Part shown: one piece after another, positions 14,056 through 33,597 of the stretch
Layout of the letters: every line of letters starts with the position of its first letter
How positions within the stretch are numbered: the stretch's first letter is position 1
Assembly (NCBI GenBank): GCA_001179505.1
Contig: CDMY01000325.1
Location: 1 to 64,000 of the forward strand
Direction of reading: 5' to 3'
From: Vitrella brassicaformis CCMP3155
Lineage: Eukaryota; Protista; Chromerida
Length of the DNA: 64,000 bases
Made by a program: the position numbers and the translations under genes
The notes under the pieces: generated by a model
Database searches by the model: none
What the model was told of the DNA's origin: nothing
Seen by the model: only the letters and a program-made list of their open reading frames with translations

Positions 14056-15276
14056 TCAGAGAGGTTGGAATGCACGGAGCGCCATCAGCTTCCTCTCTTT
14101 GCCTTTCCCCTGCCCTCTGTGTTTGTTCCTACCGTGACTAGGTTGCTGGCGCTGCTCGGGGGTGCGTTGGGGAAGGTCTCGGTGGTCTGCCAGAAGATCT
14201 CCATCTCGCACAGTATCGTCAGCCTGTCGCTGTTGGCATCCAGCACGGGCGACAACTCCTCCAACTCGGCCTCTGCAGACAATACATGCAGACGCATGAA
14301 AGCCAAGAACGATCCTGCCACCCCACCCCACCCCCTCCACCCATCCGTCCATCCATCCATCCATCCATTCACCGCTCCCGTACGTGTGATGAACTCGTCG
14401 AATCCCCAGTCCCGGTCCTGCGTGAAGGACCGCATGCCCTCGGGCTCCCGATTGTGAACTGACAACACATACACATGCAACACACAGACCGCCCATTCCC
14501 ACGTTTTCTCCCTCCCCCCCTCCCACCATCGCTGCCCCCTCTTCTCACTCACCCTCCTGTCTGTTCTGGTCCAGCAATGAGAACTTGTAATGGCAGACGA
14601 GTGGCGTGGTGTTCTCGGTGCCCAGAAACAGGGACACGGCGCCCTTGTTCTCCTCGCCCTTGCCGAAGGGCCACAGCTCCAGGTACCACTGCTGCAAGCA
14701 ATCCACAAAGCGTACCAGGCATCCAGACATCCATCCATTCAACGCAGACGCGCATCCGTCCTTCCCTCCACCCCTCACACCCCACACACCTTGGTAGCCG
14801 ACTCCTGCCCAGGGAACTCTACCTTCTTCACCGGACTGAAGTAGTGGCGAACCATCTCCTTGCCCCTCACTGCAAGGCAGCAGAAAGCATCGAAAAACCC
14901 AACAATAAACACATCAAAACAAATCATCCATTCGTTCATCCATCCGCCCAATGCAGCCATCTCTGCAGCAGTCCATCCATCCATCCATCTGACCGGTCGA
15001 TGCGATTTGCCTGATGACGTGGAAGCGCTCCACTGCCCACACATGTTTGTGCTCGGTGGAGGGCTGGTGCGTGGTGGCGCTGGGTAGACTCCTACGGCGT
15101 TTGGTCACACGGTCGGACTCCTGAGGAGGAGGTGCGGTGGCTTGCGAGTCCGAGGAGGCCGCTGCTGCTACGGACGAGGATGAATCCCCGCCCCTGGGCT
15201 CCTCCGACGAGGATGAAGCCCCGCCGCGGGGCTCCTCCCTCTCTATGGCAGAGGCGCAACGCTTCAACAAATGCAT
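12483..15276 (-). CDS. MATH-BTB (SPOP/BPM-like) cullin-3 substrate adaptor
   Basis: MATH: HVWAVERF, WYLELWPFG...VSLFL, YKFSLL, SFTQDRDWGFDEFI, DRLTILCEM. BTB: YSDVIIECGGIEFKANKLILMAQSK|VFERMLDGEYSEARESRVQVRDVDKYSMRQLLQYFYSD. BACK-like ILIQADTYHNHALKQQC. Ala/Gly-rich tail. Confidence 0.9.
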
Positions 15277-16629
15277 TTCGCTACAAAAACATCAACACAC
15301 TCAACCTCTTCCCTAAATAGAAAGTCTCAAACGTAAACAGACGCGGTGACAAGAGGCTGGCCTGGTGGCGTCTGTGTGGAGGAATTGCGAGTCTTTGTAA
15401 TGTGATGGTTTTTGGGTGCTTGAATAGACAATGTGGGTGATTGTCTGCACCACAATCTGTGTGTGTCTGCGTCTCACCCATCGATTGTCTCAGAGCTCGT
15501 GTACACTTTCCCGGACACACCAACGCAGGTACCACATCCAATTGACCGACGTATGCCACCTATCTGTCAACAACCAGGGTCATAGCCCCACAAGCGATCT
15601 GGGCGGATGCGTCAGTGCAACTATCCTCCTCTCACCCTCCCGTCCATCAACCCACACACCACCACACAATTCACCACCCTCGCACTTGACCAGGGGCAGC
15701 TGATCAGCACACGCACGGCATATCATATCATATCATATCAAGTCTCGCGCAGCATTGATGTGTGTGTGTCTCGTGAGGTTGGGTGATTCTCAGTCTGACT
15801 TCACAGCAGCCATTATTGGTTGTCTGAGTTAATGCAGATCATAAGCAAGGGCGAAAAGCCACTCAGAAGGGCAAGGGGAGGCACGTCTGAGGTGGCTTTG
15901 TGGTGGATGGCACGTCGATGTGTGCCACGAGTGATAAGATGTTGACAGTGATCATGGGCCGAACCAAGCAGCGCACGACAGGCTTTATTTGACTGTGAAG
16001 ACAAAGAGACGTCAGTCGGCAGCCGCCAGCGGTTGACCCTCTTCAATTAATTATCAACTTGATGCGGTCCCGCAAATGTCTCACGAGCAGACGGACAAGT
16101 CTTCCAATTCCCACACGAGGCACGAGGGAGAACAAACATACACACTTCATCTCACACAGAAGCGGAGGGCCATAAAGCGGAGACGAGAGGGAGGGAGACA
16201 CGCGTGGCACTCATCGAAACGTGTGCGTCACGTCCAGCATTGGCGTGTCGCGTCATCACATGGAATGGCATGGCATGGCATGCTTTCGAAGACACCTCAT
16301 TCTCTCTCCCTCTCCTCTACTCCCGCCTTGCAGACCCAAAGTGTCGGCACACAAGGAGGGCGAAAAACAACGCTTCCCATGCAGACAGAAAGACAGACAG
16401 ACAGACAGGCATGACTTTGCCGTCACGATGCAAAGGGGACCAACAGCACCCGTCATTGTCTTCCTCCCTCTGTGCCCCTCCCCAAGTCAGCTGGCAACAC
16501 TAGGGCAGCTCAGTCGCTGAATCAAGTTTCTTCCCTCAGCAGTTCTGAAATCCGAGGCCCACACACGTCAAATGCCATACAATGTCGAAAACAAAAGGTC
16601 CTGACCCAATGCCGGCCTTTTTCAAGATG

Positions 16630-19600
16630 TCAGGCCAGTTCTTCTTGTACGCACGCTGACAGCCCAGAGACGACCCCTCCAAGCGAGTGCAGCTCTTGAT
16701 GGCTCTCATGCTTCTTCTCGACGAAGCTCTCGCCCATTTCACGCTTCTTCTCGTCCATTTCACACTGGCCGGTGTCTTCGAAGAAAAAGAATGTCTCGCA
16801 CTTGTCGCTGTCGGCACATGCCCTGGAGCACTCACTGACGGCCACCATGTCGACGACGGGGCTCTCCCGCTCCGGCTTTGGTCTGGCCAGGTGCTCCCTC
16901 AGGCCGATGTCGGGCTGGTAGCAGCGGCAGGGCACTGCAGAGAGGGGAGGGGACACACTCACAGCACCACTCTCCTCGTCGCGAGACGACACAACCAGCG
17001 GCACTGATTGCACGCAACAGACACACACAGAGACACACAACATGGTCCGTGTTGCATTTCGTGTGGCCGTCATACCCTTGAGTGCCTTGGATGGCCTGAG
17101 AAGCTCACTGTCGCCCTTGACGGGCACCACCCGCACATACAAGGCCACGTCGGTCACGTTGGCGTTGCTGTCTGTCGTCAGAGTCACGTCCCGGGCCGCC
17201 ATGGTGTCGACCAGCTCCTGCAGTGTGACGATCTCCTCGAAGGCGGTCTTGCTGCGCTCCATCAGGTGCCGGCTGAGCGGCACATCACTGTCAGCGCCGA
17301 TGTACAGCCGCCACTTGCTGATCCCTACACAAAAGGCCATCGATCACTGCCTGCGTGTAATGTCTCTGCGTGCCTACCTGTGACGCCATTGAATGAGAAG
17401 CGCATGGTCCAGTCCTGCAGAAGGGCGATCGACGGCTGGCCGCCACTCGCCTGCGTGTTGGCGTCGCTGCAAAGGAGAAGCCGCGGCCTCTCCGTCGAGA
17501 AGCCCTCCCAGCTGTGCAGCAGTGGACGATGGCCTCGAAAGCCTTCGAACTCGCGAACTATCGTCGGATTGTCGCCGTAAGTCACCTCAGGGAAGAATGG
17601 ACCAGTGTAGCCCCAGGATATCAGCATGGTCGGGGGATTGCCCCTGACACAAAGACGGAATGTGCATTGTACGCACTGATGACCGTGTCTACTCGCTTAC
17701 TCTCCGTTGTCGACCTTCTGGACCCCTCCGCAGCACGTGCTGCTGATTCTGTACAAACACGAAGAGACGCATGACCTATTCTGCGCGTGGATTCCTCACT
17801 TGTTCGGATGCGTAAAGGACCAGACTTTCGTGGCCGTCATCTTGTTCAGGTCAAGACTCAGCTCGAGAGCCCTGGAAGGCCGTGTCCCGCCGGTATGCCT
17901 TTGACGACCGTTGTCATACCTAAACAGCACACAAGTACACGCGGTGGATGTCTGAAAGCTGTCATTCCCTCGAGCTATTCGATGTCGCTGACATGAGGAT
18001 GTTGCCGTCCGCTAGCTGATGTGCATGGTGTTGGCCAACGAATGGGGGATCCATGTCTTCGCCGATGAAAGTAAAGTCACTGCATGGCACACGCAAACAG
18101 GCGCCGCACAAGGACACAAGTAGCTGCATTGACGTACTTCGTGTGGCCTCCCATGCGCCACAGGATCTGGCCCGTCTTGCCGCTCAGCAACAGGACGAGA
18201 TCACAGTTGCGCATGGAGACGATTACGTTCCCTGCAGTAACAAGCCATCCTCTCCAGATGTTTGCCCTGTGGAGCGCGGCTCACCGTCCGGCGTCCGCTC
18301 GGCGTTGTTTGTGTGATAGGCCTGGCGCACAAACGCAAAGAGCGACACAGGGAGACACGTATGCTGAGTGACACAAGAGTGCGTGCTCACATCTTTTGGT
18401 GCTTCCGGGAGTGTGGGGTCGGCCTCTCCAACGAAGTCGTCAATGGTCCTCCACTCCAGTAACACATTCCTGCAACACTTACCGGTGCATCCATGATACA
18501 ATCGCCATCCGATCTGCCCACTTGTCAGCGTCGAAGACGTGCACCACTGCACGAAACGTGCAAGAGAACAAAAATGCTTGAAAAGATGAGACAAGCAGCT
18601 CTGCGCCTTGCTGACCGTTGTGTACTGTGCCGTTGGTCTCGGTGCGGGCCACCAAGATCGCGTTGTCGCCGTCAAAGGAGATGCTGTGACGGTCTAGCGT
18701 CTGATATCCATGACCTGCAGACACAGTCGTCTGGCCCCGTCCCGCGCAGGACATCGTCTGCATACCGGTCTGGTGCCTGTCGACCACCTGATAAGTCGAG
18801 TTCAGCTCGTATACAGTCTCGGCCGTGTCGTTGGGCTGTATGTCCCAATGGACCAGATGGCCGCTTGGCGTTACCCCGAGCATGTCGCCCCCCCGTCCCA
18901 CCTCTTTAGTCCACCAGACCAAGTCACCCTACATACATGCACACACAGCAAGATACATTGGCGTCACCAATCAGAGCAGATGGACACATGACGTACCTGA
19001 CGTGTAGCGATAAAACTTTGTCCAGCCAAAAGGTGGATGACAAAGAAATACAGCTCCTTGTCCCCCGTGCCAATGTCTTCCCCCCTCCCCTCCAAGGCCG
19101 CCTTTTCCCCCTCGGCTGACGGCCTCCACTTGGCTGACCACGTCGGCAGCGTGCGGTATCGGTCCATCGGCGCCGGCTGCTTCTCAGCCTCCTGCTTTCC
19201 ATCGTGCAACCGATAACACGAGTGCGGCCAAATATCCCTTTCGCCAATCGACTCGGTCTTGGCTCTGATGTGAAATTGCCATTTATGTCCGCCCGCCTCC
19301 TCCTCTCTGCCGTTGTCAGAGCGCCGCACTCGGAGGCCGGGCCGCAGCTGGACTGTGACGTTGTCGCCGGGGACAAATGGCTTGTCAGGATAGAAGAGCA
19401 CCGTCTTGTTGTCGCGTGCAAGGACGACGCGGCCATCCACCTTGCCGCTCTGCCGGCCCTCCACATCAAAGAGTGCGTCGAGATCAGTGGGGATGACCAA
19501 ATCGCCCTCCCTGACGGGACATACACGCACACTGAAACGAGCGTCTCATCTTTGCTGCGCATCACCGGACTGCAATCGACGTCAGCTCCGACACGTGCAG

Positions 19601-19822
19601 CGCCCCTGGCCGGGGATGCATGTACTCGAACAGCCCATCGCCCCATGGACGCACAGCCCCCTCCACGACAAACGGAGATGATGAAGAGGAGGACGGCGCC
19701 TGATCCAACGACGCGGCCATGCCCTCTGCGGCAGAGGGAAAAAGGAAGCTTCTCTCGTGCTCATCTGCTGAGGCCGTCGTGAGAGACGACCACAGGAGAA
19801 CGGCAACCAGCGAGGCCGCCAT
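16630..19822 (-). CDS. Secreted arylsulfate sulfotransferase (ASST-like): signal peptide, Ig-like domain, beta-propeller, C-terminal PAN/apple domain
   Basis: Signal MAASLVAVLLWSSLTTASA. Ig-like YMHPRPGA..TSIAVR...SGKVDGRVVLARDNKTVLFYPDKPF..GDNVTV. ASST motifs LDRHSI, LLEWRTIDD, D|AYHTNNAERTPDG|NVIVSMRN...TGQILWRMGG, FVGQHHAH, SRALELSLD..TATKVWSF, GNMLISWG. C-terminal CSRACADSDKCETFFFFEDTGQC. Confidence 0.85.
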
Positions 19823-19880
19823 TTTGTGCCCACTGAGTTTACACCGTAGTTTACACGTACCGGAGCTCTTATGTTCTTGC

Positions 19881-20180
19881 NNNNNNNNNNNNNNNNNNNN
19901 NNNNNNNNNNNNNNNNNNNNNNNNNNNNNNNNNNNNNNNNNNNNNNNNNNNNNNNNNNNNNNNNNNNNNNNNNNNNNNNNNNNNNNNNNNNNNNNNNNNN
20001 NNNNNNNNNNNNNNNNNNNNNNNNNNNNNNNNNNNNNNNNNNNNNNNNNNNNNNNNNNNNNNNNNNNNNNNNNNNNNNNNNNNNNNNNNNNNNNNNNNNN
20101 NNNNNNNNNNNNNNNNNNNNNNNNNNNNNNNNNNNNNNNNNNNNNNNNNNNNNNNNNNNNNNNNNNNNNNNNNNNNNNNN
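19881..20180. other. Assembly gap (300 N)
   Basis: Run of exactly 300 N. Confidence 1.
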
Positions 20181-21625
20181 CCCCATCTCGTCAACCACCT
20201 TGGCAGTCGGTTGAATCTTCCTGAAGAACAGAGGATGTCGGCTGGATATCAGCTCTTGCAACTTGGTCAGTCGCAGCTCAGAGAAACACAAGGGTCCCAT
20301 TGACGAGCAGTAGTGAGCCTTGCCGAGCCCGCATGCGTCTTTGGAGCTTGTCCAGCACAGCCGCGTGTCGCAGAACTCCTCCTGTATGGCCCCATCCAGC
20401 TGCCCGCTGTGGTTGCTGCGCAGACCACCATTCACCTGTATCAAGCAAATGACCAAAAGGCGGGCGCACGTACACAAAGCTGTGGCAGTGTTTGTTTCTA
20501 CCTGTTTCCAGACAGCGTCGTTGCCGAGCGCGCGTCTGAGCACGTGGTGGGGGAACCACTCGTCCACCGCGGCTCTCATCCCGTCTGGGCGAGGTCGTGG
20601 CAGTCCATCATAGGGGTAGTTGAGGCCTTGGGCCGCCACAATTGTGGCGTGATATCGGTTGTACACGCGCCACTGGTGGTGCTTGGTGTCTGCGTACATT
20701 CATACAGTCACCAACAATGTGTGTGTTGCTGACTGACTCTGACTGACTGACCATATCCGGTGTCGCTGTCTGCGTCTTGACAAGCAGCAGAGCCGCTCTC
20801 TGTGGCTGCCAATGTGCGATCCGACCGCATGCGCCGAGCCTTCGACGTGTTACGGTAGCTGAAAACAGACGAGAAGGCATACAAATGATCCGCCAAGCCA
20901 ACCGGTGGAAACAGACTCCTCTGTGTATACCAGAATCTACTGGTCGGCAGCCCGCCGGTCTCGGGCACTCGGTGTTGAAAGAGCACGTCATAGAGAACGT
21001 CCGGATGGGACAGCGGGATGTGTGACACCGACAGCAGCACCATCATCTGGTTGCACGGGTCGCGAAGGGCGGCACTCCACAGGGCGTTCTCAGCCAGGAT
21101 GAACTCTCCATATTTTGTGCCATTCGCCCTCTCGATGACAAGGGGGGATGCCATCGTGCCCTCCTGCGTGTGGATCAGCACCGAGAACTTCCGCGCGTCA
21201 CTGGACAAACCAATCCACTCGTCCCACAGCGGACCGAAAGGAAGCCCTTTCTTCGCAAGGAACAGCAGGGCGACTTTCGGTGGGCCGGCGCACTCGCCAC
21301 ATCCCTTCACAGGAGCTGGCGGGCTCGTCGACTGCCTCACACAGTGGAATTGCTGAGTGGAGGATGCATTGACCTTGCCAAAGGTTGCCCGCCGCAGCGG
21401 AAGCAGTTCGTCTTCCCTGAACTTGTCTAGAGCGGCCTGGAGAGAGCATTCAGCGGTCTTCGGGACGGCAATGCGGCGGAGATGGCGCGTGAACGGCGGC
21501 CAGGTCGGGAAGCGAAAGAGCCTCGACCAGGTGAAGAAGAGAAGACCGCAGAGGAAGACGGCAGGGGGGATTGCCGTCCGGATGCTGCTCTTACAGATCC
21601 CGTATACGCCAAGGCACCCACCCAT
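20181..21625 (-). CDS. Branch/GT14-like glycosyltransferase, copy C (3' end runs into gap)
   Basis: PPKVALLFLAKKGLPFGPLW, YGEFILAENALWSAALRDPCNQMMVLLS, DEWFPHHVL, PLFFRK. The same three intron positions as copy A, including a stop-free in-frame first intron. Confidence 0.8.
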
Positions 21626-21862
21626 ACCGCTGGAGTAAAAGCACGTACGGTAGCCGCAACGGTCGCGGCAGTCCTCCCCGGAGAAAAGTCAGAGAACAAG
21701 CGCAGATGAACAAGCAGGCCAAGGAGGTCAAGAGTCTGTCGTTTGCAACGGAAAAGGCCCCTTTTCTCGCTCGAGCCTTTGCTGTTGTTTGACCTCTCTG
21801 CTCTACCCCAAAACACAGGCAGGTGACAAACCGATTCGGATAAAGACGAACAGATTCGCAAG

Positions 21863-22960
21863 ATGGCTCTGCGTCTTCCTCCTGGCGATGAGCTGGCGAA
21901 GCCCATCTCGTACTATCTGATGCAGATGGGCCTGGGCACGACATCTGAGGCATCCACACGCATGACAGCCAAGAAGACAACGGCAGACGAGGAGGATGAC
22001 ATTGATCTCTTTGGTGACGAAGATCCCAAGGCAAGCGAGGGAGGGCAGTGCACGGGGCATGCGCTCATATGTTGTTGGTGCATTGTTCGTTCAGGCGGCA
22101 GAGGAAGCGAAGAAGCTGGCAGAGAAGAAAAAGTAAGGAAAGGGACCGACAGGATAGAGGGTGGTGCATGCGGTCACCGCATCTGGTCTAAGGTGGCCTG
22201 TCTGGGTGTGTGTGTTGTCCACCGGTGCAGGGCCGAGGCACAGGCGAGCAAGAAGAAGAAGATCGAGAAGTCGCTGCTGCTCATCGACTGCAAGCCCTTC
22301 TCCACCGAAACCGACTTAGACACGCTGGCCTCGCTCGTCAAGGCCATCAAGATGGACGGACTCGAATGGAAGGAGCAGACCAAAAAGGTGTAGGCACCCA
22401 CGCCACGCGGATGCTCGCGTGTATATCTTTACGTGAGCACGTCTGTTTGTGGTTTTGGGCATGCAGATTCCCATGGCCTTCGGTCTCCACAAGCTGCAAG
22501 TGAGCTTGATTCACACAGACACCCACACACACGTGCCAGGTCATACGGAATGGTCGCCTGCTTCGTCCCCTGTCTGGCTGTGCAGGTTGGCTGTGTAGTC
22601 CAGGACGATTTGGTGTCGACAGACGAGTTGTGCGAGAAGATCGAGAATGTCGGCATGACAGGTGAGTGGGGTGAGGACCTTCCCCGTACCGCTCCCACAC
22701 GCAGAGCACCAGAGCACTCATACCTGTTGTCCCTGTGCTGTGGATGCATCCATCATTCAGAGGAGCAGATGGCCAAGCGCAAGGCCATTGATGAGGGAGA
22801 GGAGGAGGGCGATGAGGACGAAGAACTAGGGCTCGTACAGGTGAGCCACTCTGCTTGGTGTAACGTCCGTTGGCTTGCTCCTACACGCACGTGTCTGCTC
22901 TGTCGTTCGTTGGTGAATGTGTTGCAGAGTTGTGAGATCGTGAGCTTCAACAAGCTCTGA
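21863..22960 (+). CDS. EF1B: Translation elongation factor 1 beta/delta (guanine-nucleotide exchange subunit)
   Basis: EEDDIDLFGDE; KSLLLIDCKPFSTETDL; MDGLEW; IPMAFGLHKLQ|VGCVVQDDLVSTDEL; VQSCEIVSFNKL*. Confidence 0.95.
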
Positions 22961-23424
22961 TAGGACCATTCCTGCCTGGCTTCGTCCTTCTCGAGGCCTC
23001 AATTTGTTTCCTTCGACTCGCTTCATGAAAGACAGGGCTCTCACGAAGGGACTCGTGCGTGGGAGATGCTTCGGTGGCTTCTGGCTGTGCATGTCGAGTG
23101 TGCGTATATGGCGATGCGAGACGATCTGACACGCATTACACATAAGGCTGTGAGGAATGGGATCTGATGGAGAAGTGACGTTCACCAAGGCAGTCACGTT
23201 CACGCACATTCACACGATCGTCTCATGATCTGTCGTCCATTCGAGAACAGAAAAAAGACACCACCTGCCACTCAACTATCCCAGCCGCTACACACGAGTG
23301 ACAGCAGCAGCAGTGTCGACCACCCCACTACGTCGCCCAGCGTGCCACCTGCTATGAATCTGCACGCCCAGAACACGCACAGACGACGAAAGAGAAAGGG
23401 TCCCACGATCACTGACTGCATTCC

Positions 23425-23937
23425 CTAACATTCCAGCGCACCGTATGACGTGGCCAGCTCGCCGATGTGGTCATTGACCCTGACTGCATGGGTGCTCTCG
23501 CCGCTGGTGGCGCGGCGGCCATGCACTGCAGCGGCTTGTGAGTCCCTCTTGGTCGATGGTGGAACCTTGACGGCGCTGGGCGGGGCGGTGCCGAGGCTGC
23601 TCATGGTGCCGACCTTGGCCATGAGGTTGTCCACGTACTCACGCAGCACGCCATTCTCCTCACGCAACGTGTGGTTCTCACTCTTGACGCTGTCTACACG
23701 CAGAGTGAGGGCTGCAGAGGCAGAAGAAGGAAGAAACAATTAAAAGGGGTGATCGGCGATGAGGTGTGTGTCTGCCGCGTCGACTGCGCTTGCCTGCGAG
23801 AGTGTCCTGCATCTCGAGTATCTTGTCGACGAGTACATCCTTGGACATCCTAAAAACAATATCAACATGCCAGCCGATTTGAGAACGGATTGAGGTTCGC
23901 TTGCTCACTTATCGAACTTTGCCAGCTCTTTGTCCAT
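23425..23937 (-). CDS. SCOC: Short coiled-coil protein (SCOC/DUF2205-like)
   Basis: MDKELAKFDK|MSKDVLVDKILEMQDTLA|ALTLRVDSVKSENHTLREENGVLREYVDNLM parallels SCOC [39 protein letters not shown]. Confidence 0.85.
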
Positions 23938-24367
23938 CTTCTGCTTCCCTCTGAACTTTAAGCTCGCAAATGAAACGCTATCTAAGCTCGCAGGTGTGAG
24001 CGGACAAATCCTCACGAGGGCGCCCCTGCAGAGCACGAGCTGCAATCAACACCGCCACGAGAGGGACTCGCCCAGGCCAAGCCCTCACTAACGGCGGTGA
24101 GGAACTTTTGCCTCCGTCCGCTGCCCACAGCCGCAGGAGGGGATTGATTGGCTGACGGACAGACTGTGAGGTGTGCGGGGCCCACAGTCAGTTGGTCAGG
24201 GCGCGGCTGCCACCCTCACCCGCTCTCTCTTGATGCCTCTGCGGCCGGCCTGCCAAAGGCAAGACAGCAGGAGGCGACTGAGCGACCCCTTGTTCTGAGC
24301 GGGAGAGGCCGTTGTCGTCTGTCTGTGTATCTATCGGCTCTGGATTGCCTGTTTGTTCGGGGCCATC

Positions 24368-27230
24368 ATGGGTGGGTGCTTCGGGAGCCAAGTGGAGAAG
24401 GACACCGTGCAGCAGCTGTGGCAGGACCGGGCCATTCGGTGGGACCAGCCCAGGACCGTCATGGCCCTCCGGCCAGCTGAGGTCACACTACAGGCCTTCG
24501 ATGATGTGGAAGATACCAAGGTGAGCGAGAAAGACAGACAGACAGACAGACATGGGCAGGGCAAGCCCATCCATCCATCCCACTGCACTGCGTGTGTGTG
24601 GTCCCCGCGCTGCCTGCAGGGTGACAATGGTTTAGGTCGGGTGCAGATAACGAATTTGCGGATCTTGTGGACGAGCAACACGAACCCGAAGCTCAACATC
24701 AGCATCGGGATGGGGACGATTGCCTACCTGCACTTCAACATGGTCAACAGCCGCCAGTTCCAGCGGGTCCGCGCCCCCAACATCATGACCCAGTACAACA
24801 ACACCAGATTCGAGTTCACCTTCGCCATCGACTCGGACAAGGCCATGCAGCTCTTCCACCAACTCGAGACCACCGTCAGGTAGGTACCTTACCTTCCTCG
24901 CGATTGATTGACAAAGGGCGGGCGCCTCCTGCTGAGCTGATTGGCCTGCCTGCCTGTATGTGTTTTGTTTGTGTCGTTTTGTGTGCAGGCGCTACCGTGC
25001 CACACGCACTTACAGGGACCTCATTCTCAGGTTCGGGAGGCAGCGGGCGGATCTGCAATGGAAGAGGGTTTGTATGGTCGGTGTGCTGTCTGTCTGTCTT
25101 TGTCTGCGTGTTCTGCAGGGATGAGGCTCTGCTCAGCGACGGCGAGCTCACCATCCTGCCCAATGAAGAAGTCAAGAAAAAGGTAAACCGAGTCGAGCAC
25201 CGTCCGTCCCTCCCCTCCCTCCATCAGTTTGGGTGTTGGTATTGCCATGTAATGTGTGTGTGTTGGTGGTGCTGCCGTGCCGTGTGTTGTGTTGTGTGCA
25301 GGTTGAGAATTGCGACAACCTGACGACTGACGAGTCGTTCCCCGGCACGCTCTTCGTCACCAACGTACGTGGCGTGCGCATCGGATGACCGGCACACAAA
25401 ACCGTGTGCTGGATGGGATGTCTGTTCAATGTGTTGTCCTGTATTTGTTTACTGGCTTGATGTATCAGCTGAGGGTGGTCTGGTCGGCGGCCGCCACCCC
25501 CAACATCAACGTCAGCGTCCCATTCATTCAGACGGTGAGTGAGTGAGTGAGATGCAAGACACAACGGACGGCACCAGCAAGAAGGCTCGCGGCTGTCTGT
25601 GCTCGGTTTGATCAGCGTGGCGTCGGCACTCGGGCGTCGCGGTTTGGGCAGGCGCTCGTCATCGAAACCTCACAGGTGGGTGCGGCAGGGACTCAGACAG
25701 ACGAGAAGCCGTGTCGAATAGATGGACCAATGGATGTGATTCGTGTGTTGATCGCTTCATTCAGCTGAGTGGAGGTTACATTTTGGGTTTCAAGTTTCGC
25801 GAGGGCGGGGAAATCGAAAGGATGCTCGAGCTCATCAACAAACTCTTCGGAGGTAAGGCGGGCGGGCCGCCCCCTCACCACACCAATACGTGCCGTTGAC
25901 TTTTTTTGACATGTGTGAATGTCTCCTTCTTTCAGAAGCCAAGAAGAACCCCTACTTCGGCCCCCATGACGCCAGCGTCCAAGTTGTTGACGACCGGGTG
26001 AGTGAGTCAGTGAGGGCACCGGCAGGCAGGCACGACGTTCTCCACCCTCCTTCTCTGAACTTTTTGTTTCGGCGTTCGTCCATCCCTCCACTCGATCAGT
26101 TGGTGATAGTTCCTCCGTCGAGTGTGCAGAACGTTGAGGAGGAGACCACCACGGCGCCCCAGCAGCCGCAGCAGCCCCAGACGGCCACCGATAGCACAAG
26201 CGGCCCCACTGCCGTCGTCAACGTCAACAACTCCAACACACTCATGCTGCCTGAGGGCGCTGTGCAGGTGAGGTGGGTGGGGGGGATGGATGAGATAGAT
26301 GCATGCATTGATAAAGGTGGAGGGACAGCAGGTGAGTGCATGGCATGGATGTGCGTGTTTGTGTGCATGGATCGCATCTCAGGTTCGGCGGAGTGACGCG
26401 GCTCAGGTGACAACCGAGGCTGAGATTCAGACGGACAGATAGACAGACCAGAGAGGCGTTGTATGCCGTCCGTCTATCCGTTGGTTTGTCTGCTCTCTCA
26501 ATGCATCCACATCTATCAATCAGGGTGCTGGTGAGGGCGGTCGGTCCCCCTCGTCGCGTCGCGCCCGTGCCAGCGTGAGGGTACGGGAGCCCGTCACACT
26601 CGACCTTACAAAGAGACATGACAAGGTGAGTGAACAGAGAGGAGAGGGACGGACACTGAGAGAGAGAGAGGGGGGGGCAATGGATGGATGGATGGCCCAG
26701 TGATTGGCTCACCCACCGCTCCGCTCACGTGTGTGATGTGTGTGATGTGATGGATGTGGCTGATCGGCCGGCCGATCTCTCAGGAGCACGTCACGCGTCA
26801 GGAGAGCGAGGTGGGTCAGGGGGTGTCGCCCTCGAGCCGCAAATACATGGCGCCAAAGTGCGTCATCTGCATGGCCAAACCCGACGAGGTAGGGAGAGTA
26901 CCAACCAATACACACACCTCCTCAACAATACACACGACCAACCAACTCACACGTCTGTCTGTCTGTCGTCATGTCCATCACTGACTTCAGTGTGCGTTTG
27001 ACCCGTGTGGGCACGTGTGCGCCTGCATGGACTGCGCCGTCAAGCTCGACGACTGCCCGGTAAGGAAGACATACCTAAGTACCAATCCCCACTCTCTGTG
27101 GGCGGGCTGATGGTGTGCTCGATTGGCTGTGCTGGTGCCGGGCTGGCTGTTTGTGTGATGGATTCGATTCCACTTGCAGATATGTCGGACCAAGATCATG
27201 AAGGTGCTGCGGGTGTTCCTCACCACCTGA
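24368..27230 (+). CDS. BBS5: BBS5-like tandem PH protein fused to a C-terminal C3HC4 RING finger; N-terminal MGGCFG acylation motif
   Basis: WQDRAIRWD, EDTK|GDNGLGRVQITNLRILW, TRFEFTF, YRDLILR, GTLFVTN|LRVVW, NVSVPFIQ, FGQALVIET, SGGYILGFK, NPYFG are collinear with BBS5. In-phase exons continue to CVICMAKPDE|CAFDPCGHVCACMDCAVKLDDCP|ICRTKIMKVLRVFLTT*. Confidence 0.85.
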
Positions 27231-27399
27231 GTCAGTCAGTACTGACAGACGGAGAGAAAAGTCGGGGCTGCGCTGCCGGGCGATTAATATTGATTGCTGC
27301 TCACAGGAGGCCGTCCGTCCGTCAGAAACCAGGTGTATGTGATGTGTCCACTCACCGGGGAGGGGTGTATGGTGTGGTGCATGTGTAGAGTGCGTAGGT

Positions 27400-29100
27400 G
27401 CTTGCCTGCCTGCCTGCCTGCCTGGTTGGTTGGTCGTGTGTGTGTGTATGTGTATGTGTGTGTGTGTGTGTGATTTCGGAACGGCCTGTAAGGACCTGTT
27501 GTGGCGTGTGGCGTGTGTGTTTCCTTCCGCTAGCTAATCATCTGTATTATCTATGGTCGGTCTCCTCCTCTCTCTCCATTTGTGCCTGCCCATCTAGGCG
27601 GACAGACAGACAGACAGACAGACGGATGTAACCTAACCTAACCTGATGATGTATAGCTAGAGACAAAGGGAGAAGGCAGGCCTGTCTGTCTGTGTGTCTG
27701 TCTGTCTGTCTGTGTCTGTCTGTGGTTGCACTCTACCTGGGACGGCCGACCTGAAGACCTGAAGCTACTAACTAACTAGTGCCTTGCCATCTCTGTCCAC
27801 ATCCTGGCTAAGCTGACCGGCAGGCAGGGAGGGAGCTGCCTAGGTTGCCTTGCCTTTTCACTACAGCTACTACTGCTGCTGCTGCTGCTGCTGCTGGTGC
27901 CGTTGGCGTTGCTGCTGCGGTGTTGCTGCCTGCTGTTGTGCAGAAATTAAGACAGTGGGTTGGGGGGGGCGGTTGGGTGGGCAGACAGACAGACAGACGG
28001 GCGGACGGGCGGCGATAAAGGATGCATTGCCTGCCTGCCTGCCTGTACGTGTGGGTGCATTGCATTGCCTGCGTGGATTGTATATAGTCAGTGAGTGACC
28101 ATGACAACCACATACATAGGGACATCTGTCTGTACATACATGCATACGCAACCAAGAGAGTAACAGAGAGAGAAAGGGAGACCGAATCGGTGTGTACCAG
28201 TGAGCGAGCGGATGGGCGGGATGGCCACCGCACCGCACCGCACCGCATCATTGATTGCACTGGATTGGATAGCACGAGTGGAAAGGGGTTTTGTGCTGTA
28301 TACCCGAATCTACCGACCTGCCTGCCTGCCTGCCTGCCTCCGAAAGTGTTTCGCCTAGGTGCCTCCACGTTGGCTGCACACACTGCACTGCACTGCACGG
28401 GCGTACGTGCCACTCACTCACTACTCACTGTACAGCTTCCTACCTATCTCTGTCTTCCTGCCTGCCTGGGTGCAGTTGGGTCGGTGGCGACTGGCGACTG
28501 TGTCGGCTTTTTGACATGCCTGCCTGTCTGAAGGGTGGACGACATAGATAGCGTCATAGCATGATAGCAAGATCGCACTGTACATATATCTGAGACGAAG
28601 CCCCTCGCCCCCCTCCCTCCCTCCCTCCCTCACTACTGGCTCGGGTGGTCTTGTCTCTCTGTAAGTAGGTACTAGGCAGGGGCAGGTGGTACGTGTGTGT
28701 GTGCGTGTGTGTGTGTGTGTGTGGCTCTATATGGATGGATGGATGTGTGTGCATGGTCGGTGGCTGGCTGGTGGGGTGGTCCACGGCACCCGTGGGTATG
28801 TGAGCACACAATTTGAGACACACGGTGTTTGTGATGCTGCTGCCCACCCACCGCGGGACGGACGGACACAGAGAGAGAGAGAGAGAGAGAGGAGTGGAAG
28901 GACACACACTCTTCAGTCAATCATTCAATGAATGGATAGATACACCGATGGACGATGGATGGATCAAGGTGTCTTCGCACGCACAGCAGGAGGTCTAGAC
29001 ACACACACACACATGAGCTAATCACTAACCACAGCCGGCAGGCAGGCCGGCAGGGAGGGAGGCCAGAGAAAGCAATCCGATCCGCCAACTACACAACCTG
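27400..29100. repeat. Microsatellite-dense intergenic region between convergent genes
   Basis: Mixed (GCCT)n, (GT)n, (GACA)n, (CTG)n, (GCACT)n, (GGAT)n, (GA)n and (GAGG)n runs. No protein-like ORF. Confidence 0.85.
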
Positions 29101-29228
29101 AAAATCTCTCTCTCGTGTTGACGTGAGTATGCACAACGGCATGGCTCGTGCGTGCCGCAAGATAGATAAGCTAGTCATCACAAGATCCAACCACCCACCC
29201 AGCGCCCCGCCAGTCAACCAACACTCAC

Positions 29229-32200
29229 TCAGTTCTTCTGCTCTGCAGCTGCCCCCTGAACACCTTCCGCCCCCTCCCCGTCAGCCCCTCGTTTCTCGCT
29301 GTCAACGCTCTTGGCGCGCCACTCACGGCGCACTGTGCCGCTACCACTACTGCTGGGCCCATCACCCGCCGCGGCCCCTGCTGCTGGAGGTGCTGCTGCT
29401 GGTGTCGCCTGCCCGTCCCCCTTCTTGACGTCCCCTCGAGTCGGGCTTGCTGGTGGTGGTGTTGGTGTTGGTGCCTTGGCTTTGATGCGCCACTGCTGCT
29501 GCACCTGCTGCACCTGCTGCACCCTCTCTGTGGCGCCTCTCTCGGTGTTGGCCTGCTGCTGCTGCTGTTGCTGATCGCTGTTGGTGTTGTCTGTGTCTTT
29601 GGTGTGGACGGGCCTCCACTTGAGGACGGTCCGTTCTGCTGGGGGAGGGGGGATGACTGTCACAGCTGGCGGCTGTCGCTGTCGCTGCTGGTGCTGCTGC
29701 TGGTGCTGTGGGTGTGGGTGCGATGCTGCGATGTTGAGGGTGGCACGGATGGTCCTCAGCGCGTCGCCCGCAGAGGGGTTGGGGGGTGCCTGTGGATGCT
29801 GATATGGCTGATAATATGGCTGATGCTGTGGCAGCTGCTGGTACATCCCACCACTATGGTGCACCGGATGGTACATGGGTGGCGGCGATGGCATCGCCAT
29901 GTGTGGGGGCCGGTACACAGACGGGGGAATCACATGCGGCACCGACAGCTGGACAGAGGGAGGGGGCGGCATGGGTGGCATCGGTGGCATGGGCGGTGGT
30001 GGACTGGGTCCGGTCAGCACCTGGCTGAGCAGCCTGTCGAAGGCGTTGGCCCCTCCTGGCGGGGGCGGTGGGGGCGGCTGGTATGGGAAAGCGAGGGGGT
30101 CGGTGGAGAGTGGGTGGCCGGCCTGCGATGGGACGTCTGCGGCGGGGGGATGCTTGGTGCGGTTCTTCTTCCGGGCGGTGGACTTCTCCTTCTCCAACTG
30201 AATGAACCAGGCAGGAATCAAGCATGACGCATAACAGACGGCGGGTGTGGTGTGCACACGTGGTTGTGTGAGGGGTAGGGTACCTGTCTGATGTAGTCCC
30301 AGTCTTGCTGTGGGATGGACCCCTCGCGCACCATGTCGCGAATGAGAGTGAAGAACACACCCCCGGGGGTCCGCCGCTTGTTCTGCCCGTCGTTGGTCAG
30401 CTGACCACCTGACATAAGCAAGCACACAACCGATGTCCATGGCGTATTCCCCACCCGGCCGCCCCCAGCCACCCAGCAACCGACTGACCGTTTCTCTCTA
30501 TCTCGAGTGTCTTCTGCAGGATTTCCTCTGTACGCTGGTGCACCAGACAAACAGCAAGGCGGGCGAGAGCAGGGGAGTCGTTCGTTGTGTGGCGGGCGGC
30601 ATGTCTGTCTGTTAGGTGGGTGGTTGGCTTGGGTACCTTCATGCCGAGCCTGACGACCGTCCGCACCACCTGACTGCGCTTAGGCTCCTGCGGATGGATG
30701 GCATGGCGAGGCGAATGGGCGGATGTGTGTGTGTGTAGAGAGAGAGTGAGTGTCCCTACCAACCTACCTTGAGTATGTCGATGACCTTCTCGATGTAGGT
30801 GCGCACCTCATACGACAGGCTGTACATGCCAGCTGCACAGACAGACACAACATACACAACGGGTGTGCACTCTCTTTGGTCCTCACACGGGCGGGCGTAC
30901 CGAAGTGCGCTTCCTCTTGTTGAGCCTGCACCACCCCCACAACGGGAGGAGCGCTCGATGAGCTGGCCTGCTGCTGCTGCTCTTGTGGTGCTTGTGCTGC
31001 GATGGGACTGTTGCTGCTGCTGGGGGCGTCAGGCAAGTCCGTCGCCTGCTCCCCTCCTGCCGCTGCTGACGCTGCTGGTGGGGCGGCTGCCGGTACTTGA
31101 GTAGCTGCTGGTGGGGGTGGGTATACGGGGTTGTTGCCGAGACGAAGCTTCCAGATCAAGGCGTGAAGGTAGGCGCTCTGGACAATATAATCCACAGGCA
31201 AAGGCAAAGGCATTCATTGGTGTGGATGGCACGTTCTTTGGCTGACTGGCCTGGCCCCATAGATACCATGTGTTTCTGCTCTCTGACGGCGGCGAGTCGT
31301 GCGGGCGTGACGTCGAAGCGGTCGGACGCATTCACCTCCGCGCCGTGGGCTATCAAACAGCTCGCATTCGCCACCTATATGCGGGGGATGGATGGATGGA
31401 TGGATGTGCCGATTGATTGTGTGTTGTGTGAGCGCATGGTATGGTACCTCTCCGTACGACGCGGCGGCGTGAAGGGCCGTGCGGCCGTCCTTGGTGCGGG
31501 CATTCGGATCGGCACCTGAGAAAACGAGAAGAGATAGATGGGGCCTCCGGTCTCTGTTTGTTTGTCTGTTCGCCTTTTGTTGTGTGCCTGGAGGGTGTGG
31601 TACGTACCGAGGTGGAGGAGCCACTTGAGGTAGTCAGTGTGGTGTCTGGCCGCCGCGTAGTGCAGGGGCGTGCTGCCGCTCTCGTCAGAGTCATTCACTG
31701 ACACGCACGCACCACGGACACCAAGACGAAGACGCAGGTCAGATGAATGAGAATGTCACGCGCCGTTTGATGTGATGTGGTGGATGTGCTGCGAGTAGGT
31801 ACCTGTGGCCCCGTGGTGCAGCAGCAGTTTTGTGATGTCCGTGTTGCCCTTGCTCGCCGCCAGGTGGATCGGGTAGCTCTGGATGGATGGCAAGAGAGAG
31901 GGAGAGAGAGAGGGAGAGATCTTCCACATGCATCGCATCCTTTTCGCCCGTGTGTGTGCGTTGTGTGTGGCACATACGAAGTTGACTCCCCGCCGCGACG
32001 GCATGAGAGTGTGAGAGAACCGCAAACCGGTCTCGGCACCGTGGTCCAACAACGCCTGGTATGGTGCAAACACCATGGCCAATCAATCAGTAGAGTGATG
32101 ATGGCGTGGTGTGGGTGCAGCGCGTTCCCGACCCAAGCATCTATCTCGCGTACCTTGGCGTATGCGGGTTCGTTGGTGATGATGGTGATGTTGAGGGGCG

Positions 32201-33475
32201 TCCACAACTTATCGTCTGGCACATTCACCTGGTCGGTCAACCACCATAACACAACACAACACAACACAACACAACACAACAAAGCGGACGACCGACTGGT
32301 ATTGGCGATTCTGTGTGCGGTGCGCATCCGCGTGGCGTGTGGGGTGGAGGGTGGATGATGGGTGTGGGTGTGGGTGTGGGTGTGCAAACGTACGTACCGA
32401 TGTGAGTGCGCCGTGTTTGAGGAGCCAGACGACCACCCGCAGCCGCCTGGGCTGCCCACACGCATGGTGAAGCGCCGTACGCCCATCCATGTCCCTATAA
32501 GGAACAATCACACACATATATACACACATGCATCACACGGGGTGGATGGAGATGGGTATTCAATTCCCTGGCTGGCTGCTTCTCCTCTCCATCTCTCTCT
32601 GTGTCTGTCTGGTCCAGACATGCCGAGCCGACCTGCTATTGACGTCATGTCCTTCGTCCATGAGGCGCTTCATCTCAGATATGCGACCACGACACACAGC
32701 TGCATTGATTGCAACCCGCACATCACATCACATGCAATGCATCCACTCACACACACGAACCGACCGATGCACCAACCAACCAACCAACCACCCCACATCA
32801 CACCGCATCTACCTTTGTTGAAGGCCTTCTGCGTGGGGTCGTCCGAGTTGATGGTCAGCTCCAGCCGCTCGTTCTCGCCCTCGTCACCATCACTGCTCCC
32901 AACCGCACCAATGTCATAGTCCACACCCAACGCCTCATCGGGCAGCTCCATCACGCCCTCGTACTCCACCAGGAAGCTGCTGCTGTTGCTGTTGCTGCTA
33001 GAGCTGGTGCCGGTGGCTGCAGCTGGGTTGGCAGAGAGGGAGGGGTGGCGAGGGGTGTGGGGTGGGAGCGGTGCTCTGCTTCTGCTACGGCTGGTGATGC
33101 TGCCCGGCGCGACTGCTACTCTGGTGCCTGAGCTGTTGCTGCCTGTGAACACACAAGGGAAAGTCGTGCACTCATTCTGGTGTGCCCATCTCTGTGTGTG
33201 TGCGTATCTCCCTTGCCTGTTCTGGTGAGGTGCGATGATCTCTTCTGCGCGCCGGCCACCCTGGCGCCGCGGACGACGCCCTCCCCTCTTCGCCTGCTGC
33301 TGGGAGGCCTCTCTCTCTTCTGTGTCTGTGGCGGAGGGGCAGGGCGAACGTCTGTGTGAATGAACTCGTCGAGGAGGCCATACAGCTCCTCCTCCATCGC
33401 CGTATCGTCATCCTCACACGCAACACCAGCACCAGCACCACCACCACAACCAGAAGCAGCAACAGACTCCGCCAT
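29229..33475 (-). CDS. Ankyrin-repeat + PHAX RNA-binding domain protein with Pro/Gln-rich C-terminus
   Basis: About 6 ANK repeats (GRTALHHAC, WTPLNIT, YPIHLAASKGNTDITKLLL, GSTPLHYAAA, GRTALHAAASYG, DVTPARLAA) splice in phase to YIEKVIDILK|EPKRSQVVRTVVRLGMK|RTEEILQKTLEIERNG|GQLTNDGQNKRRTPGGVFFTLIR, the PHAX RBD signature. Confidence 0.85.
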
Positions 33476-33597
33476 CTCTTCGGCTCTGTGCGTGTGGCGA
33501 TCGCACCTTATCTGGCCGGCAACAGATCTTGGCTGGCGTATCCTGTCCGGCGAAAGAAGGACACAGAAGGAGATATTAGTGTTATGGGATGTGGCTG

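What the first reader, a model, noticed from the sequence alone, without database searches (positions are those of the whole stretch)
24368..27230. BBS5 paralogue rebuilt as a probable membrane-anchored RING E3 ligase
Seen: both BBS5 PH-like domains are collinear through NPYFG. The usual BBS5 C-terminal tail (AYFAD...LGLAIE) is absent. In-phase exons instead run through a Thr/Gln linker to a complete IAP-type C3HC4 RING ending at TGA 27228-27230, and the N-terminus is MGGCFG. Established: BBS5 is a phosphoinositide-binding BBSome subunit, the BBSome removes ubiquitinated ciliary cargo, and MGxC starts often carry myristoyl plus palmitoyl groups. Inference: a lipid-anchored ciliary or membrane ubiquitin ligase built from a BBSome subunit. 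I do not know of this architecture being described.
Basis: partly seen in the sequence, partly recalled or inferred. Interest (0 to 1): 0.85.

Follow-up and report, generated by a model that had tools for sequence, protein, structure and literature searches.

The report
BBS5-like protein fused to RING ligase
This is a real, transcribed Vitrella gene joining a lipid-anchor start motif, the two PH-like domains of the cilium protein BBS5 and an IAP-type RING ubiquitin-ligase domain; the same family includes the puzzling lone "BBS5" of Toxoplasma.

Summary
Window 24368-27230 (+) is the coding region of Vitrella brassicaformis CEM02386.1 / A0A0G4EVF5 (458 aa). Four independent transcript assemblies carry the uninterrupted ORF across every junction, so the RING exons are not a separate gene.

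The protein has four parts:
- an MGGCFG start;
- a BBS5 tandem PH module (Pfam BBL5, E 4.6e-76, profile positions 1-262 of 334);
- a disordered linker;
- an IAP-type RING at the extreme C-terminus (zf-C3HC4_3, E 1.9e-12).

The BBS5 C-terminal extension, which contacts BBS9 in the BBSome, is absent.

The same layout occurs in about ten protein clusters only. They come from Chromera, Colpodella, Toxoplasma, Hammondia, Besnoitia, Neospora, Rhytidocystis, a eugregarine and some unidentified transcriptomes. All 14 members start MG..C; none of 250 canonical BBS5 proteins does. They form one long-branch clade.

Public databases already list this domain pair. However, the papers I could search call the Toxoplasma member plain "BBS5", the only BBS protein that parasite keeps, and never mention the RING.

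The most likely function is a dually acylated, membrane-tethered, dimeric RING E3 that works without the BBSome. Ligase activity, lipidation, location and substrates are untested. Whether Vitrella also has a canonical BBS5 was not resolved.

The parts
23993..24367 (+). 5' UTR (minimum extent). It contains one 21-aa uORF at 24233-24298.
   Evidence: cDNA contig L005 aligns from 23993. The uORF and the in-frame TGA at 24296 are.
24368..24388 (+). Codons for MGGCFGS: predicted N-myristoylation site (Gly2) with a neighbouring palmitoylatable Cys4.
   Evidence: Fits the PROSITE-type myristoylation consensus. An MG..C start is found in 14 of 14 family members and 0 of 250 canonical BBS5 proteins. 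Start codon checked.
24368..24520 (+). CDS exon 1 (aa 1-51)
24620..24879 (+). CDS exon 2 (aa 52-138)
24989..25030 (+). CDS exon 3 (aa 138-152)
25119..25182 (+). CDS exon 4 (aa 152-173)
25302..25364 (+). CDS exon 5 (aa 174-194)
25469..25534 (+). CDS exon 6 (aa 195-216)
25616..25675 (+). CDS exon 7 (aa 217-236)
25765..25852 (+). CDS exon 8 (aa 237-266)
25936..25997 (+). CDS exon 9 (aa 266-286). It holds NPYFGP and the first half of the family-specific motif.
26100..26267 (+). CDS exon 10 (aa 287-342): LVIV, then the Thr/Gln/Pro-rich linker.
26383..26406 (+).
   Evidence: Present in all four cDNA contigs and in P0001, with AG/GT borders.
26524..26625 (+). CDS exon 12 (aa 351-384): linker with the conserved (P)xLDLTK motif, aa 375-380, at 26596-26613.
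26784..26888 (+). CDS exon 13 (aa 385-419): invariant SPxSxKY motif (aa 399-405, 26826-26846) and the first RING zinc pair, C410 and C413.
26991..27059 (+). CDS exon 14 (aa 420-442): RING ligands C425, H427, C431, C434 and C441.
27180..27230 (+). CDS exon 15 (aa 443-458 plus TGA): last ligand C444, Arg445, and the C-terminal tail KVLRVFLTT.
24416..25973 (+). BBS5-type tandem PH (GLUE-like) module, aa 17-278, spread over exons 1-9.
   Evidence: Pfam BBL5, E 4.6e-76. BBS5 chains 6vbu_5 and 6xtb_E, E 5e-58. AF2 model shows two PH folds, and Foldseek ranks 6vbu_5 first at E 1e-24.
25974..26111 (+). Family-specific conserved segment SVQVVDDRLVIV (aa 279-290, split by intron 9). It takes the place of the BBS5 C-terminal extension.
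   Evidence: Conserved as DRLV(I/V)V across the family. Predicted as a beta-hairpin but with low confidence.
26853..27230 (+). IAP-type C3HC4 RING at the extreme C-terminus (aa 408-458, exons 13-15).
   Evidence: zf-C3HC4_3, E 1.9e-12. Gap-free alignment to the cIAP2, cIAP1, MYLIP and XIAP RINGs, running to the last residues of the IAP RINGs. pLDDT 78-90, and Foldseek cIAP2 RING TM 0.75.
27231..27979 (+). 3' UTR (minimum extent), rich in microsatellites.
   Evidence: cDNA contig L003 aligns as far as 27979.

Best explanation
[quoted passage not shown] In this family a BBS5-type double PH module lost the C-terminal extension that ties BBS5 to BBS9. It gained an N-terminal MG..C lipidation motif and a C-terminal IAP-type RING.

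Proposed mechanism:
1. Gly2 is myristoylated during translation, and the nearby Cys is then palmitoylated. This holds the N-terminus of the first PH domain on a membrane.
2. The BBS5-like PH pair, which is structurally GLUE-like, acts as the recognition module. Its target could be a membrane-protein tail, a lipid surface or ubiquitin.
3. A flexible linker of about 110 residues in Vitrella (up to several hundred in coccidians) lets the RING reach bound targets.
4. The RING probably dimerises through its C-terminal tail, as IAP RINGs do, and recruits a ubiquitin-charged E2 to ubiquitinate those targets.
5. The protein works independently of an assembled BBSome.

Shown here: the gene structure, its transcription as one mRNA, the domain identities, conservation of every motif, the restricted distribution, and monophyly of the family.

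Inferred only: lipidation, ligase activity, dimerisation, membrane location, what the PH module binds, and independence from the BBSome.
For: - One mRNA: four independent cDNA assemblies carry the whole 458-aa ORF and span all 14 introns.
- Domains: BBL5 E 4.6e-76 and zf-C3HC4_3 E 1.9e-12. BBS5 chains from the solved BBSome align at E 5e-58, and the cIAP2 RING at about 1e-9 to 4e-11. The AF2 model shows two PH folds, a disordered stretch at 271-406 and a confident RING. Foldseek finds BBS5, the Vps36 and EAP45 GLUE domains, and the cIAP2 and IDOL RINGs.
- RING competence: the eight zinc ligands, Pro442 and Arg445 directly after the last Cys are invariant in 10 of 10 aligned members. The position after the first Cys is Val in 9 of 10 and the next is Ile or Val. 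The tail RVFL aligns column for column with RTFL of cIAP1 and cIAP2.
- Lipid anchor: MG..C occurs in 14 of 14 members once two gene-caller start errors are corrected, and in 0 of 250 canonical BBS5 proteins.
- Loss of the BBSome link: profile positions 263-334 are absent. That extension makes extra contacts with BBS9 (PMC7018513). Only 53 of 113 columns that are near-invariant in canonical BBS5 are kept, with fixed signature changes.
- Separate lineage: the family is one clade (SH-aLRT 100) on a long branch, and its internal order roughly follows organism relationships.
- Independence from the BBSome: T. gondii is reported to lack all BBS proteins except this one, TGME49_259965 (PMC10074162). 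The BBSome is reported lost in Sarcocystidae (PMC11149776).
Against: - No biochemical or localisation data exist for any member.
- TGME49_259965 did not appear in the held text of the Toxoplasma myristoylome or hyperLOPIT supplements. Those files may be truncated, or the protein may not be expressed in tachyzoites.
- Chromera has Gln at the +6 position of the myristoylation consensus.
- Canonical BBS5 lacks conserved phosphoinositide pockets, so what the PH module binds is open.
- The AF2 model rests on only 10 sequences (mean pLDDT 61.5).
- If Vitrella has no other BBS5, this protein could still sit in a BBSome.
Confidence: 0.68

Rival explanations
1. It is the organism's only BBS5 and still a true BBSome subunit. 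In chromerids the BBSome would then carry its own built-in RING ligase, which could ubiquitinate ciliary cargo directly.
For: The PH module is strongly BBS5-like. I found no canonical BBS5 from Vitrella, Chromera or Colpodella among named hits or checked contigs. Chromerids make flagellated zoospores and were reported to keep flagellar components (PMC4501334).
Against: The C-terminal extension that adds contacts with BBS9 is gone. About half of the canonical near-invariant positions have changed and the branch is long. The family persists in T. gondii, which is reported to have no other BBS protein. My searches for a canonical copy were not exhaustive: one search listed only 120 of 1844 hits, and one search kept only 80 of 352 loci.
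Confidence: 0.15
2. The RING is a non-catalytic dimerisation or scaffold module, like MDMX, and the protein is not itself a ligase.
For: Several of the weaker RING matches are to MDM2 and MDM4. No activity data exist.
Against: The best matches are active IAP and MYLIP RINGs. All zinc ligands, Pro442, Arg445 and the aromatic tail residue are conserved across the family.
Confidence: 0.1
3. The MG..C start is not lipidated. The protein is soluble and is recruited only through its PH module.
For: The protein was not found in the held Toxoplasma myristoylome tables. Chromera departs from the consensus at one position.
Against: The motif is kept in 14 of 14 members across very divergent lineages and is absent from 250 canonical BBS5 proteins. 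The start codon is well supported.
Confidence: 0.12
4. The fusion is an artefact: two neighbouring genes merged by the reader or by the annotation.
For: None was found. It was the obvious worry for a hand-spliced model with 14 introns.
Against: Four independent transcript assemblies contain the full ORF. Complete ORFs with the same layout occur in the transcriptomes of Chromera, Colpodella, Rhytidocystis and Cephaloidophora.
Confidence: 0.01

Closest known systems
Canonical BBS5 (BBSome subunit; Pfam PF07289 BBL5; PDB 6VBU chain 5, 6XTB chain E)
   Same: The tandem PH-like domains are collinear, at 36-39% identity over about 260 residues. Hallmark motifs are shared: WQDR, VEDTKG, NLSIG, RFEF, YRDL, FGxALV, SGGYxLGF and NPxFG.
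   Different: - There is no C-terminal helical extension, the part that makes extra contacts with BBS9.
- It adds an N-terminal MG..C motif, a long disordered linker and a RING.
- Only 53 of 113 canonical near-invariant columns are kept.
- It forms a separate long-branch clade.
- It is present where the rest of the BBSome is reported absent.
IAP-type C-terminal RING E3s (cIAP1/2, XIAP, ML-IAP, MYLIP/IDOL, MUL1; Pfam PF13920 zf-C3HC4_3)
   Same: Gap-free alignment with the same C3HC4 spacing, CPxCR, and a C-terminal R-x-F-L tail at the very end of the protein. From established knowledge, these RINGs are active as dimers, and the tail aromatic helps position the donor ubiquitin.
   Different: There are no BIR, FERM or transmembrane domains. 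The substrate-side module here is BBS5-like, which I did not find in any of them.
Lipid-anchored or lipid-binding RING E3s with the same RING type (MGRN1, NEURL1, RFFL/CARP2, RNF34/CARP1; also ZNRF1/2 and yeast Pib1). Recalled from my own knowledge, apart from the MGRN1 RING match.
   Same: The design logic matches: an N-terminal acyl anchor and/or a lipid-binding domain places a C-terminal RING on a membrane to ubiquitinate membrane proteins. The MGRN1 RING is a weak sequence match.
   Different: The targeting domains are unrelated (FYVE-like, NHR and others). This is an analogy of layout, not homology. None of it was tested here.
ESCRT-II Vps36/EAP45 GLUE domain
   Same: The single PH domains of the model superpose on GLUE domains (TM about 0.6). 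Weak Pfam Vps36_ESCRT-II hits recur across the family. The BBSome structure paper notes the same likeness for BBS5.
   Different: The sequence similarity is marginal. Ubiquitin or PI3P binding by this module is untested.

Membership tests
BBS5 / Pfam BBL5 (PF07289) | Two tandem PH-like domains collinear with BBS5 | tested here: met
   Pfam 256 bits against a cut-off of 23.8. 6vbu_5 at E 5e-58 over residues 4-265. Foldseek ranks 6vbu_5 first.
BBS5 / Pfam BBL5 (PF07289) | C-terminal extension (profile positions ~263-334; AYxADG...ELGLAIE...LW) that makes additional contacts with BBS9 | tested here: not met
   The match stops at profile position 262 of 334. The canonical consensus tail has no counterpart in the family. 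The role of the extension is taken from PMC7018513.
BBS5 / Pfam BBL5 (PF07289) | Branches among canonical BBS5 orthologues of related organisms (dinoflagellates) | tested here: not met
   The family is a separate clade (SH-aLRT 100) on a branch of more than 2 changes per site. It is not sister to the Amoebophrya plus dinoflagellate BBS5 clade. Long-branch effects are possible.
BBS5 / Pfam BBL5 (PF07289) | Functions as a subunit of an octameric BBSome | not testable with these tools
   The other BBS genes of Vitrella could not be searched. The T. gondii member is reported to exist without any other BBS protein (PMC10074162).
RING E3 ligase, zf-C3HC4_3 (IAP type) | Eight zinc ligands with C3HC4 spacing | tested here: met
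   C410, C413, C425, H427, C431, C434, C441 and C444 are invariant in 10 of 10 aligned members. Pfam 47 bits against a cut-off of 27.
RING E3 ligase, zf-C3HC4_3 (IAP type) | E2-contact residues (aliphatic residue after the first Cys pair, Pro in CPxC) and the Arg after the last Cys | tested here: met
   V411/I412, P442 and R445 are conserved and aligned with the cIAP and MYLIP RINGs. Their functional meaning comes from established RING biochemistry.
RING E3 ligase, zf-C3HC4_3 (IAP type) | RING at the extreme C-terminus with an aromatic tail residue (dimer and donor-ubiquitin contact) | tested here: met
   RVFLTT-stop aligns with RTFL of cIAP1 and cIAP2. The tail is conserved as (R/K)(I/V)(F/Y) in the family.
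RING E3 ligase, zf-C3HC4_3 (IAP type) | E2-dependent ubiquitin transfer | not testable with these tools
   This needs an in vitro ubiquitination assay.
N-myristoylated and S-palmitoylated (dually acylated) proteins | Met1-Gly2 with a permissive +3 to +7 context, at the true N-terminus | tested here: met
   MGGCFGS fits the consensus. 11 of 14 called N-termini fit as they stand; two more do after correcting gene-caller starts, and Chromera keeps MGxC but has Gln at +6. The start codon is supported by the upstream in-frame stop and the cDNAs.
N-myristoylated and S-palmitoylated (dually acylated) proteins | Cys within a few residues of Gly2 | tested here: met
   A Cys lies at position 4 to 6 (position 8 from the first Met in Colpodella) in 14 of 14 members, and in 0 of 250 canonical BBS5 proteins.
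N-myristoylated and S-palmitoylated (dually acylated) proteins | Demonstrated lipid attachment | tested here: inconclusive
   '259965' was not found in the held supplement text of the T. gondii myristoylome paper. The files may be incomplete, or the protein may not be expressed in tachyzoites.

The most novel reading that the evidence does not exclude
The family is a ciliary part put to a new use. An ancestor of apicomplexans and chrompodellids turned the membrane-facing BBS5 module into a self-sufficient, lipid-anchored ubiquitin ligase. This ligase now works on pellicle, alveolar or apical membranes, or on the flagellar membrane of gametes and zoospores. That would explain why Toxoplasma keeps a 'BBS5' after losing every other BBSome protein.
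Probability: 0.25. Interest if true: 0.75.

Novelty: new variant of a known kind. Interest (0 to 1): 0.55.

Why it matters
Comparative studies of cilia repeatedly note that Toxoplasma keeps BBS5 alone. They treat it as a true orthologue of the BBSome subunit (PMC10074162; also PMC4743101). The evidence here shows that this protein belongs to a distinct family: RING-bearing, probably lipid-anchored, and shared with free-living chromerids and colpodellids. This has three consequences:
- It changes how BBS5 presence should be scored in phylogenetic profiles.
- It offers a concrete, testable explanation for an odd retention.
- It adds a candidate membrane-associated E3 ligase to apicomplexan cell biology, testable by standard tagging and knockout in laboratory T. 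gondii strains or in the recently transfectable Chromera (PMC12407925).

It is also a clean example of a trafficking-complex subunit being rebuilt into an enzyme.

Tried and rejected
**Artefactual fusion.** Rejected on the four cDNA contigs.

**My first 14-exon model.** It lacked the 24-nt microexon and was corrected against P0001 and the cDNAs.

**Search for a canonical BBS5 in Vitrella or Chromera.** Each attempt was inconclusive:
- A profile of 17 canonical BBS5 proteins returned 1844 hits, but only 120 are listed and none is named Vitrella or Chromera.
- The metagenome and transcriptome scan kept 80 of 352 loci. None came from the Vitrella or Chromera sample contigs (Ga0186167, Ga0186270, Ga0186166).
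- EukProt and MMETSP hits that I checked were dinoflagellates, euglenids, Cyanophora or Mastigella.
- Three intermediate-identity candidates came from environmental samples.
- P0016 is from a different MMETSP sample.

**Supplements of the chromerid genome paper.** They hold no BBS terms.

**Toxoplasma resources.** '259965' and 'Bardet' were not found in the held myristoylome or hyperLOPIT supplements. The CRISPR screen paper and Portman 2014 are not held.

**Last word-index protein search, with the 716-aa Toxoplasma protein.** It was swamped by low-complexity words and added only the truncated Neospora model.

**Other long, multi-stretch BBS5 hits.** On Pfam scanning, none carries a C-terminal zf-C3HC4_3 RING.
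Full report
**Identity of the locus**

The window is the first 64 kb of scaffold CDMY01000325.1 of Vitrella brassicaformis CCMP3155 (GCA_001179505.1), with the same coordinates. Vitrella is a photosynthetic relative of apicomplexan parasites. The finding's span, 24368-27230 on the + strand, is exactly the coding span of the annotated protein CEM02386.1 / UniProt A0A0G4EVF5. That entry is named only "RING-type domain-containing protein".

**Checking the observation**

Reading the sequence, I built a 14-exon GT-AG model that gave an open 450-aa frame. The public protein P0001 has 458 aa. With it, the 15-exon model translates exactly to P0001.

The equivalent data already exist. Four independently assembled transcript contigs each carry the uninterrupted 1377-nt ORF: two MMETSP assemblies held at JGI and two Logan assemblies of runs SRR646408 and ERR558152. 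Aligned to the window, each breaks at exactly the 14 introns, including 26267|26383, 26406|26524, 26625|26784, 26888|26991 and 27059|27180. The mRNA spans at least 23993-27979.

The start codon is secure. ATG 24368 sits in the context ATCATGG and follows an in-frame TGA at 24296. The only other ATG in the 5'UTR opens a 21-aa uORF.

**Domains**

- *BBS5 module.* Pfam gives BBL5 (PF07289) at E 4.6e-76 for aa 17-278. This covers profile positions 1-262 of 334. Against solved structures, residues 14-275 align almost gap-free with residues 4-265 of bovine and human BBS5 from the BBSome (6vbu_5, 6xtb_E; E 5e-58).
- *RING.* Pfam gives zf-C3HC4_3 (PF13920) at E 1.9e-12. The last 50 residues align gap-free with the RINGs of cIAP2, cIAP1, MYLIP/IDOL, XIAP, MUL1 and ML-IAP.
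- *Structure model.* An AlphaFold2 model built on ten family members shows two PH folds (about 23-149 and 170-269, pLDDT mostly 65-92). It also shows a weakly predicted hairpin at 279-290, a disordered stretch at 271-406 and a confident RING (pLDDT 78-90). Foldseek ranks BBS5 first (E 1e-24). It also finds the Vps36 and EAP45 GLUE domains for single PH domains, and the cIAP2 and IDOL RINGs.

**A family, not a one-off**

The same layout appears in:
- Chromera velia (Cvel_22522; complete ORF on transcript L007);
- Colpodella angusta;
- Toxoplasma gondii (716 aa, annotated "Bardet-Biedl syndrome 5, putative"), Hammondia and Besnoitia;
- three transcripts of Rhytidocystis sp. (TSA GHVS, identified through PMC7522995);
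- the eugregarine Cephaloidophora cf. communis (TSA GHVH, identified through PMC10739892);
- an unidentified TSA (GHVR);
- four Logan transcript contigs of unknown organisms.

Neospora NCLIV_026940 is a truncated, mis-spliced model of the same gene.

I ran an exhaustive profile search of 1.84 billion representative proteins. It found only about ten 50%-identity clusters of this type. Scores drop sharply from 402 to 282 bits within the family's most divergent members, then to 260 bits and below for ordinary BBS5 proteins. Other long or multi-stretch BBS5 hits lack this RING. No member named from Plasmodium, Cryptosporidium, piroplasms, dinoflagellates or ciliates appeared. The listing carries few names, so I treat those absences as provisional.

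**What is conserved across the family**

- M1, G2 and C4.
- The BBS5 hallmarks.
- A DRLV(I/V)V segment just after NPxFGP.
- A (P)xLxLT motif.
- An invariant SPxSxKY immediately before the RING.
- All eight zinc ligands, plus Pro442, Arg445 and a (R/K)(I/V)(F/Y) tail.

The linker between these blocks cannot be aligned. Its length ranges from roughly 90 to about 360 residues.

Two members seemed to lack MG..C, but both are gene-caller start errors. P0174 has an upstream in-frame MGTCMSVVG, and P0175 begins at an internal MGAGC. That makes 14 of 14 members.

**Relation to canonical BBS5**

Of 113 columns that are at least 94% conserved in canonical BBS5, 53 are kept in the family. Several are fixed to a different residue: F to W at Vitrella position 25, T to A at 120, S to T at 181 and L to P at 187.

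In a maximum-likelihood tree the 14 RING proteins form one clade (SH-aLRT 100). More than 2 substitutions per site separate it from all canonical BBS5 proteins. It is not sister to the dinoflagellate plus Amoebophrya BBS5 clade. The tool warns that long branches meet at that join.

Within the clade, four groupings appear:
- Toxoplasma plus Besnoitia with Rhytidocystis;
- Cephaloidophora with one Logan sequence;
- Chromera with GHVR;
- Vitrella and Colpodella near the base.

This pattern fits vertical descent from the common ancestor of apicomplexans and chrompodellids.

**What the literature says**

The BBSome structure paper (PMC7018513) reports four relevant points:
- BBS5 sits at the periphery of the complex, against the BBS9 beta-propeller.
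- Its extended C-terminus makes additional contacts with BBS9.
- Its PH domains resemble ESCRT GLUE domains.
- The expected phosphoinositide pockets are neither conserved nor, mostly, accessible.

The segment lost in this family is therefore precisely that C-terminal BBS9-contacting extension.

A 2023 survey states that T. gondii "lacks all but BBS5" (TGME49_259965). [quoted passage not shown] The word RING does not occur in that paper (PMC10074162). Other papers list T. gondii as having BBS5 (PMC4743101; PMC3931281) or as having lost the BBSome (PMC11149776).

I found no paper that mentions the RING fusion or the acylation motif. The domain pair is nonetheless precomputed in the public protein collections.

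**Most likely mechanism**

The protein is probably a membrane-tethered RING E3 ligase.
- Myristate on Gly2 and palmitate on Cys4 would pin the N-terminus of the first PH domain to a membrane.
- The BBS5-like PH pair would act as the recognition module.
- The flexible linker would act as a tether.
- The C-terminal RING would recruit a ubiquitin-charged E2, probably as a dimer as in IAPs, given the aligned R-x-F-L tail.

The conserved SPxSxKY lead-in may extend the RING or be a regulatory phosphorylation site. That is speculation.

I consider the architecture and its conservation shown. Ligase activity and lipidation are probable. BBSome independence is likely for coccidians and open for chromerids. 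The site of action is unknown. Many MG..C proteins of apicomplexans sit on the inner membrane complex, which I cite from general knowledge, so a pellicle or alveolar location is as plausible as a flagellar one.

**What stays unresolved**

I could not determine whether Vitrella also has a canonical BBS5, so "paralogue" is not established. All attempts were inconclusive because listings are capped and the genome itself could not be searched. No expression, localisation or fitness data for any member were reachable.

**Verdict**

The BBS5-derived, probably lipid-anchored RING ligase reading stands. The paralogue status and ciliary role are untested. The architecture is in databases but, as far as I could search, not in the literature.
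- It is a new variant of known kinds (BBS5 family; IAP-type RING E3), restricted to apicomplexans and their closest relatives.
- Interest is moderate to good, because it reinterprets the often-cited lone BBS5 of Toxoplasma.

Noticed in passing
window 24233-24298: The 5'UTR has a single upstream ORF of 21 aa (MPLRPACQRQDSRRRLSDPLF). It is in the same frame as the main CDS and ends at TGA 24296, so it may have a translational control role.
   Followed up: no
window 24528-24552, 27399-27472, 27601-27644, 27682-27723, 27873-27935: Intron 1 and the 3'UTR are dense in short tandem repeats: (AGAC)6, (TGCC)6, (GT)18, (GACA)6, (TAACC)3, (CTGT)11 and (CTG)21. The GACA/CTGT type recurs throughout this region.
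   Followed up: no
protein P0268 (from; origin unknown): A 773-aa predicted protein combines a PA domain, a RING-H2 finger and a full-length canonical BBL5 including the C-terminal tail. This is a different order of 'RING plus BBS5', and may be two neighbouring genes merged by a gene caller.
   Followed up: partly
protein P0240 (Neospora caninum NCLIV_026940): The Neospora gene model is truncated. It starts inside the second PH domain and reads on after 'KCVICLTSPDE' into unrelated sequence. That is the same point where Vitrella has intron 13 (window 26889-26990), which suggests a shared intron position and an annotation error.
   Followed up: partly
L088 nt 1071-1083; L089 nt 139-200: The gene callers mis-set the starts of two family members. 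P0174 really begins four codons upstream with MGTCMSVVG. P0175's called start is a non-ATG codon 20 residues before the likely true MGAGC start.
   Followed up: yes
proteins P0004, P0005, P0317 (Rhytidocystis sp., TSA GHVS): One transcriptome holds three distinct full-length copies of the BBS5-RING protein, plus a C-terminal fragment, P0279. These are either recent paralogues or a mixed or allelic sample.
   Followed up: no
window about 14368-24000 and 29200-37230 (L002): The annotated neighbours are unrelated in function. Upstream lie a MATH-BTB protein, an arylsulfotransferase-domain protein, an EF-1 beta-type exchange-domain protein and a DUF2205 protein. Downstream lie an ankyrin/PHAX-domain protein and an exostosin-type glycosyltransferase.
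   Followed up: no
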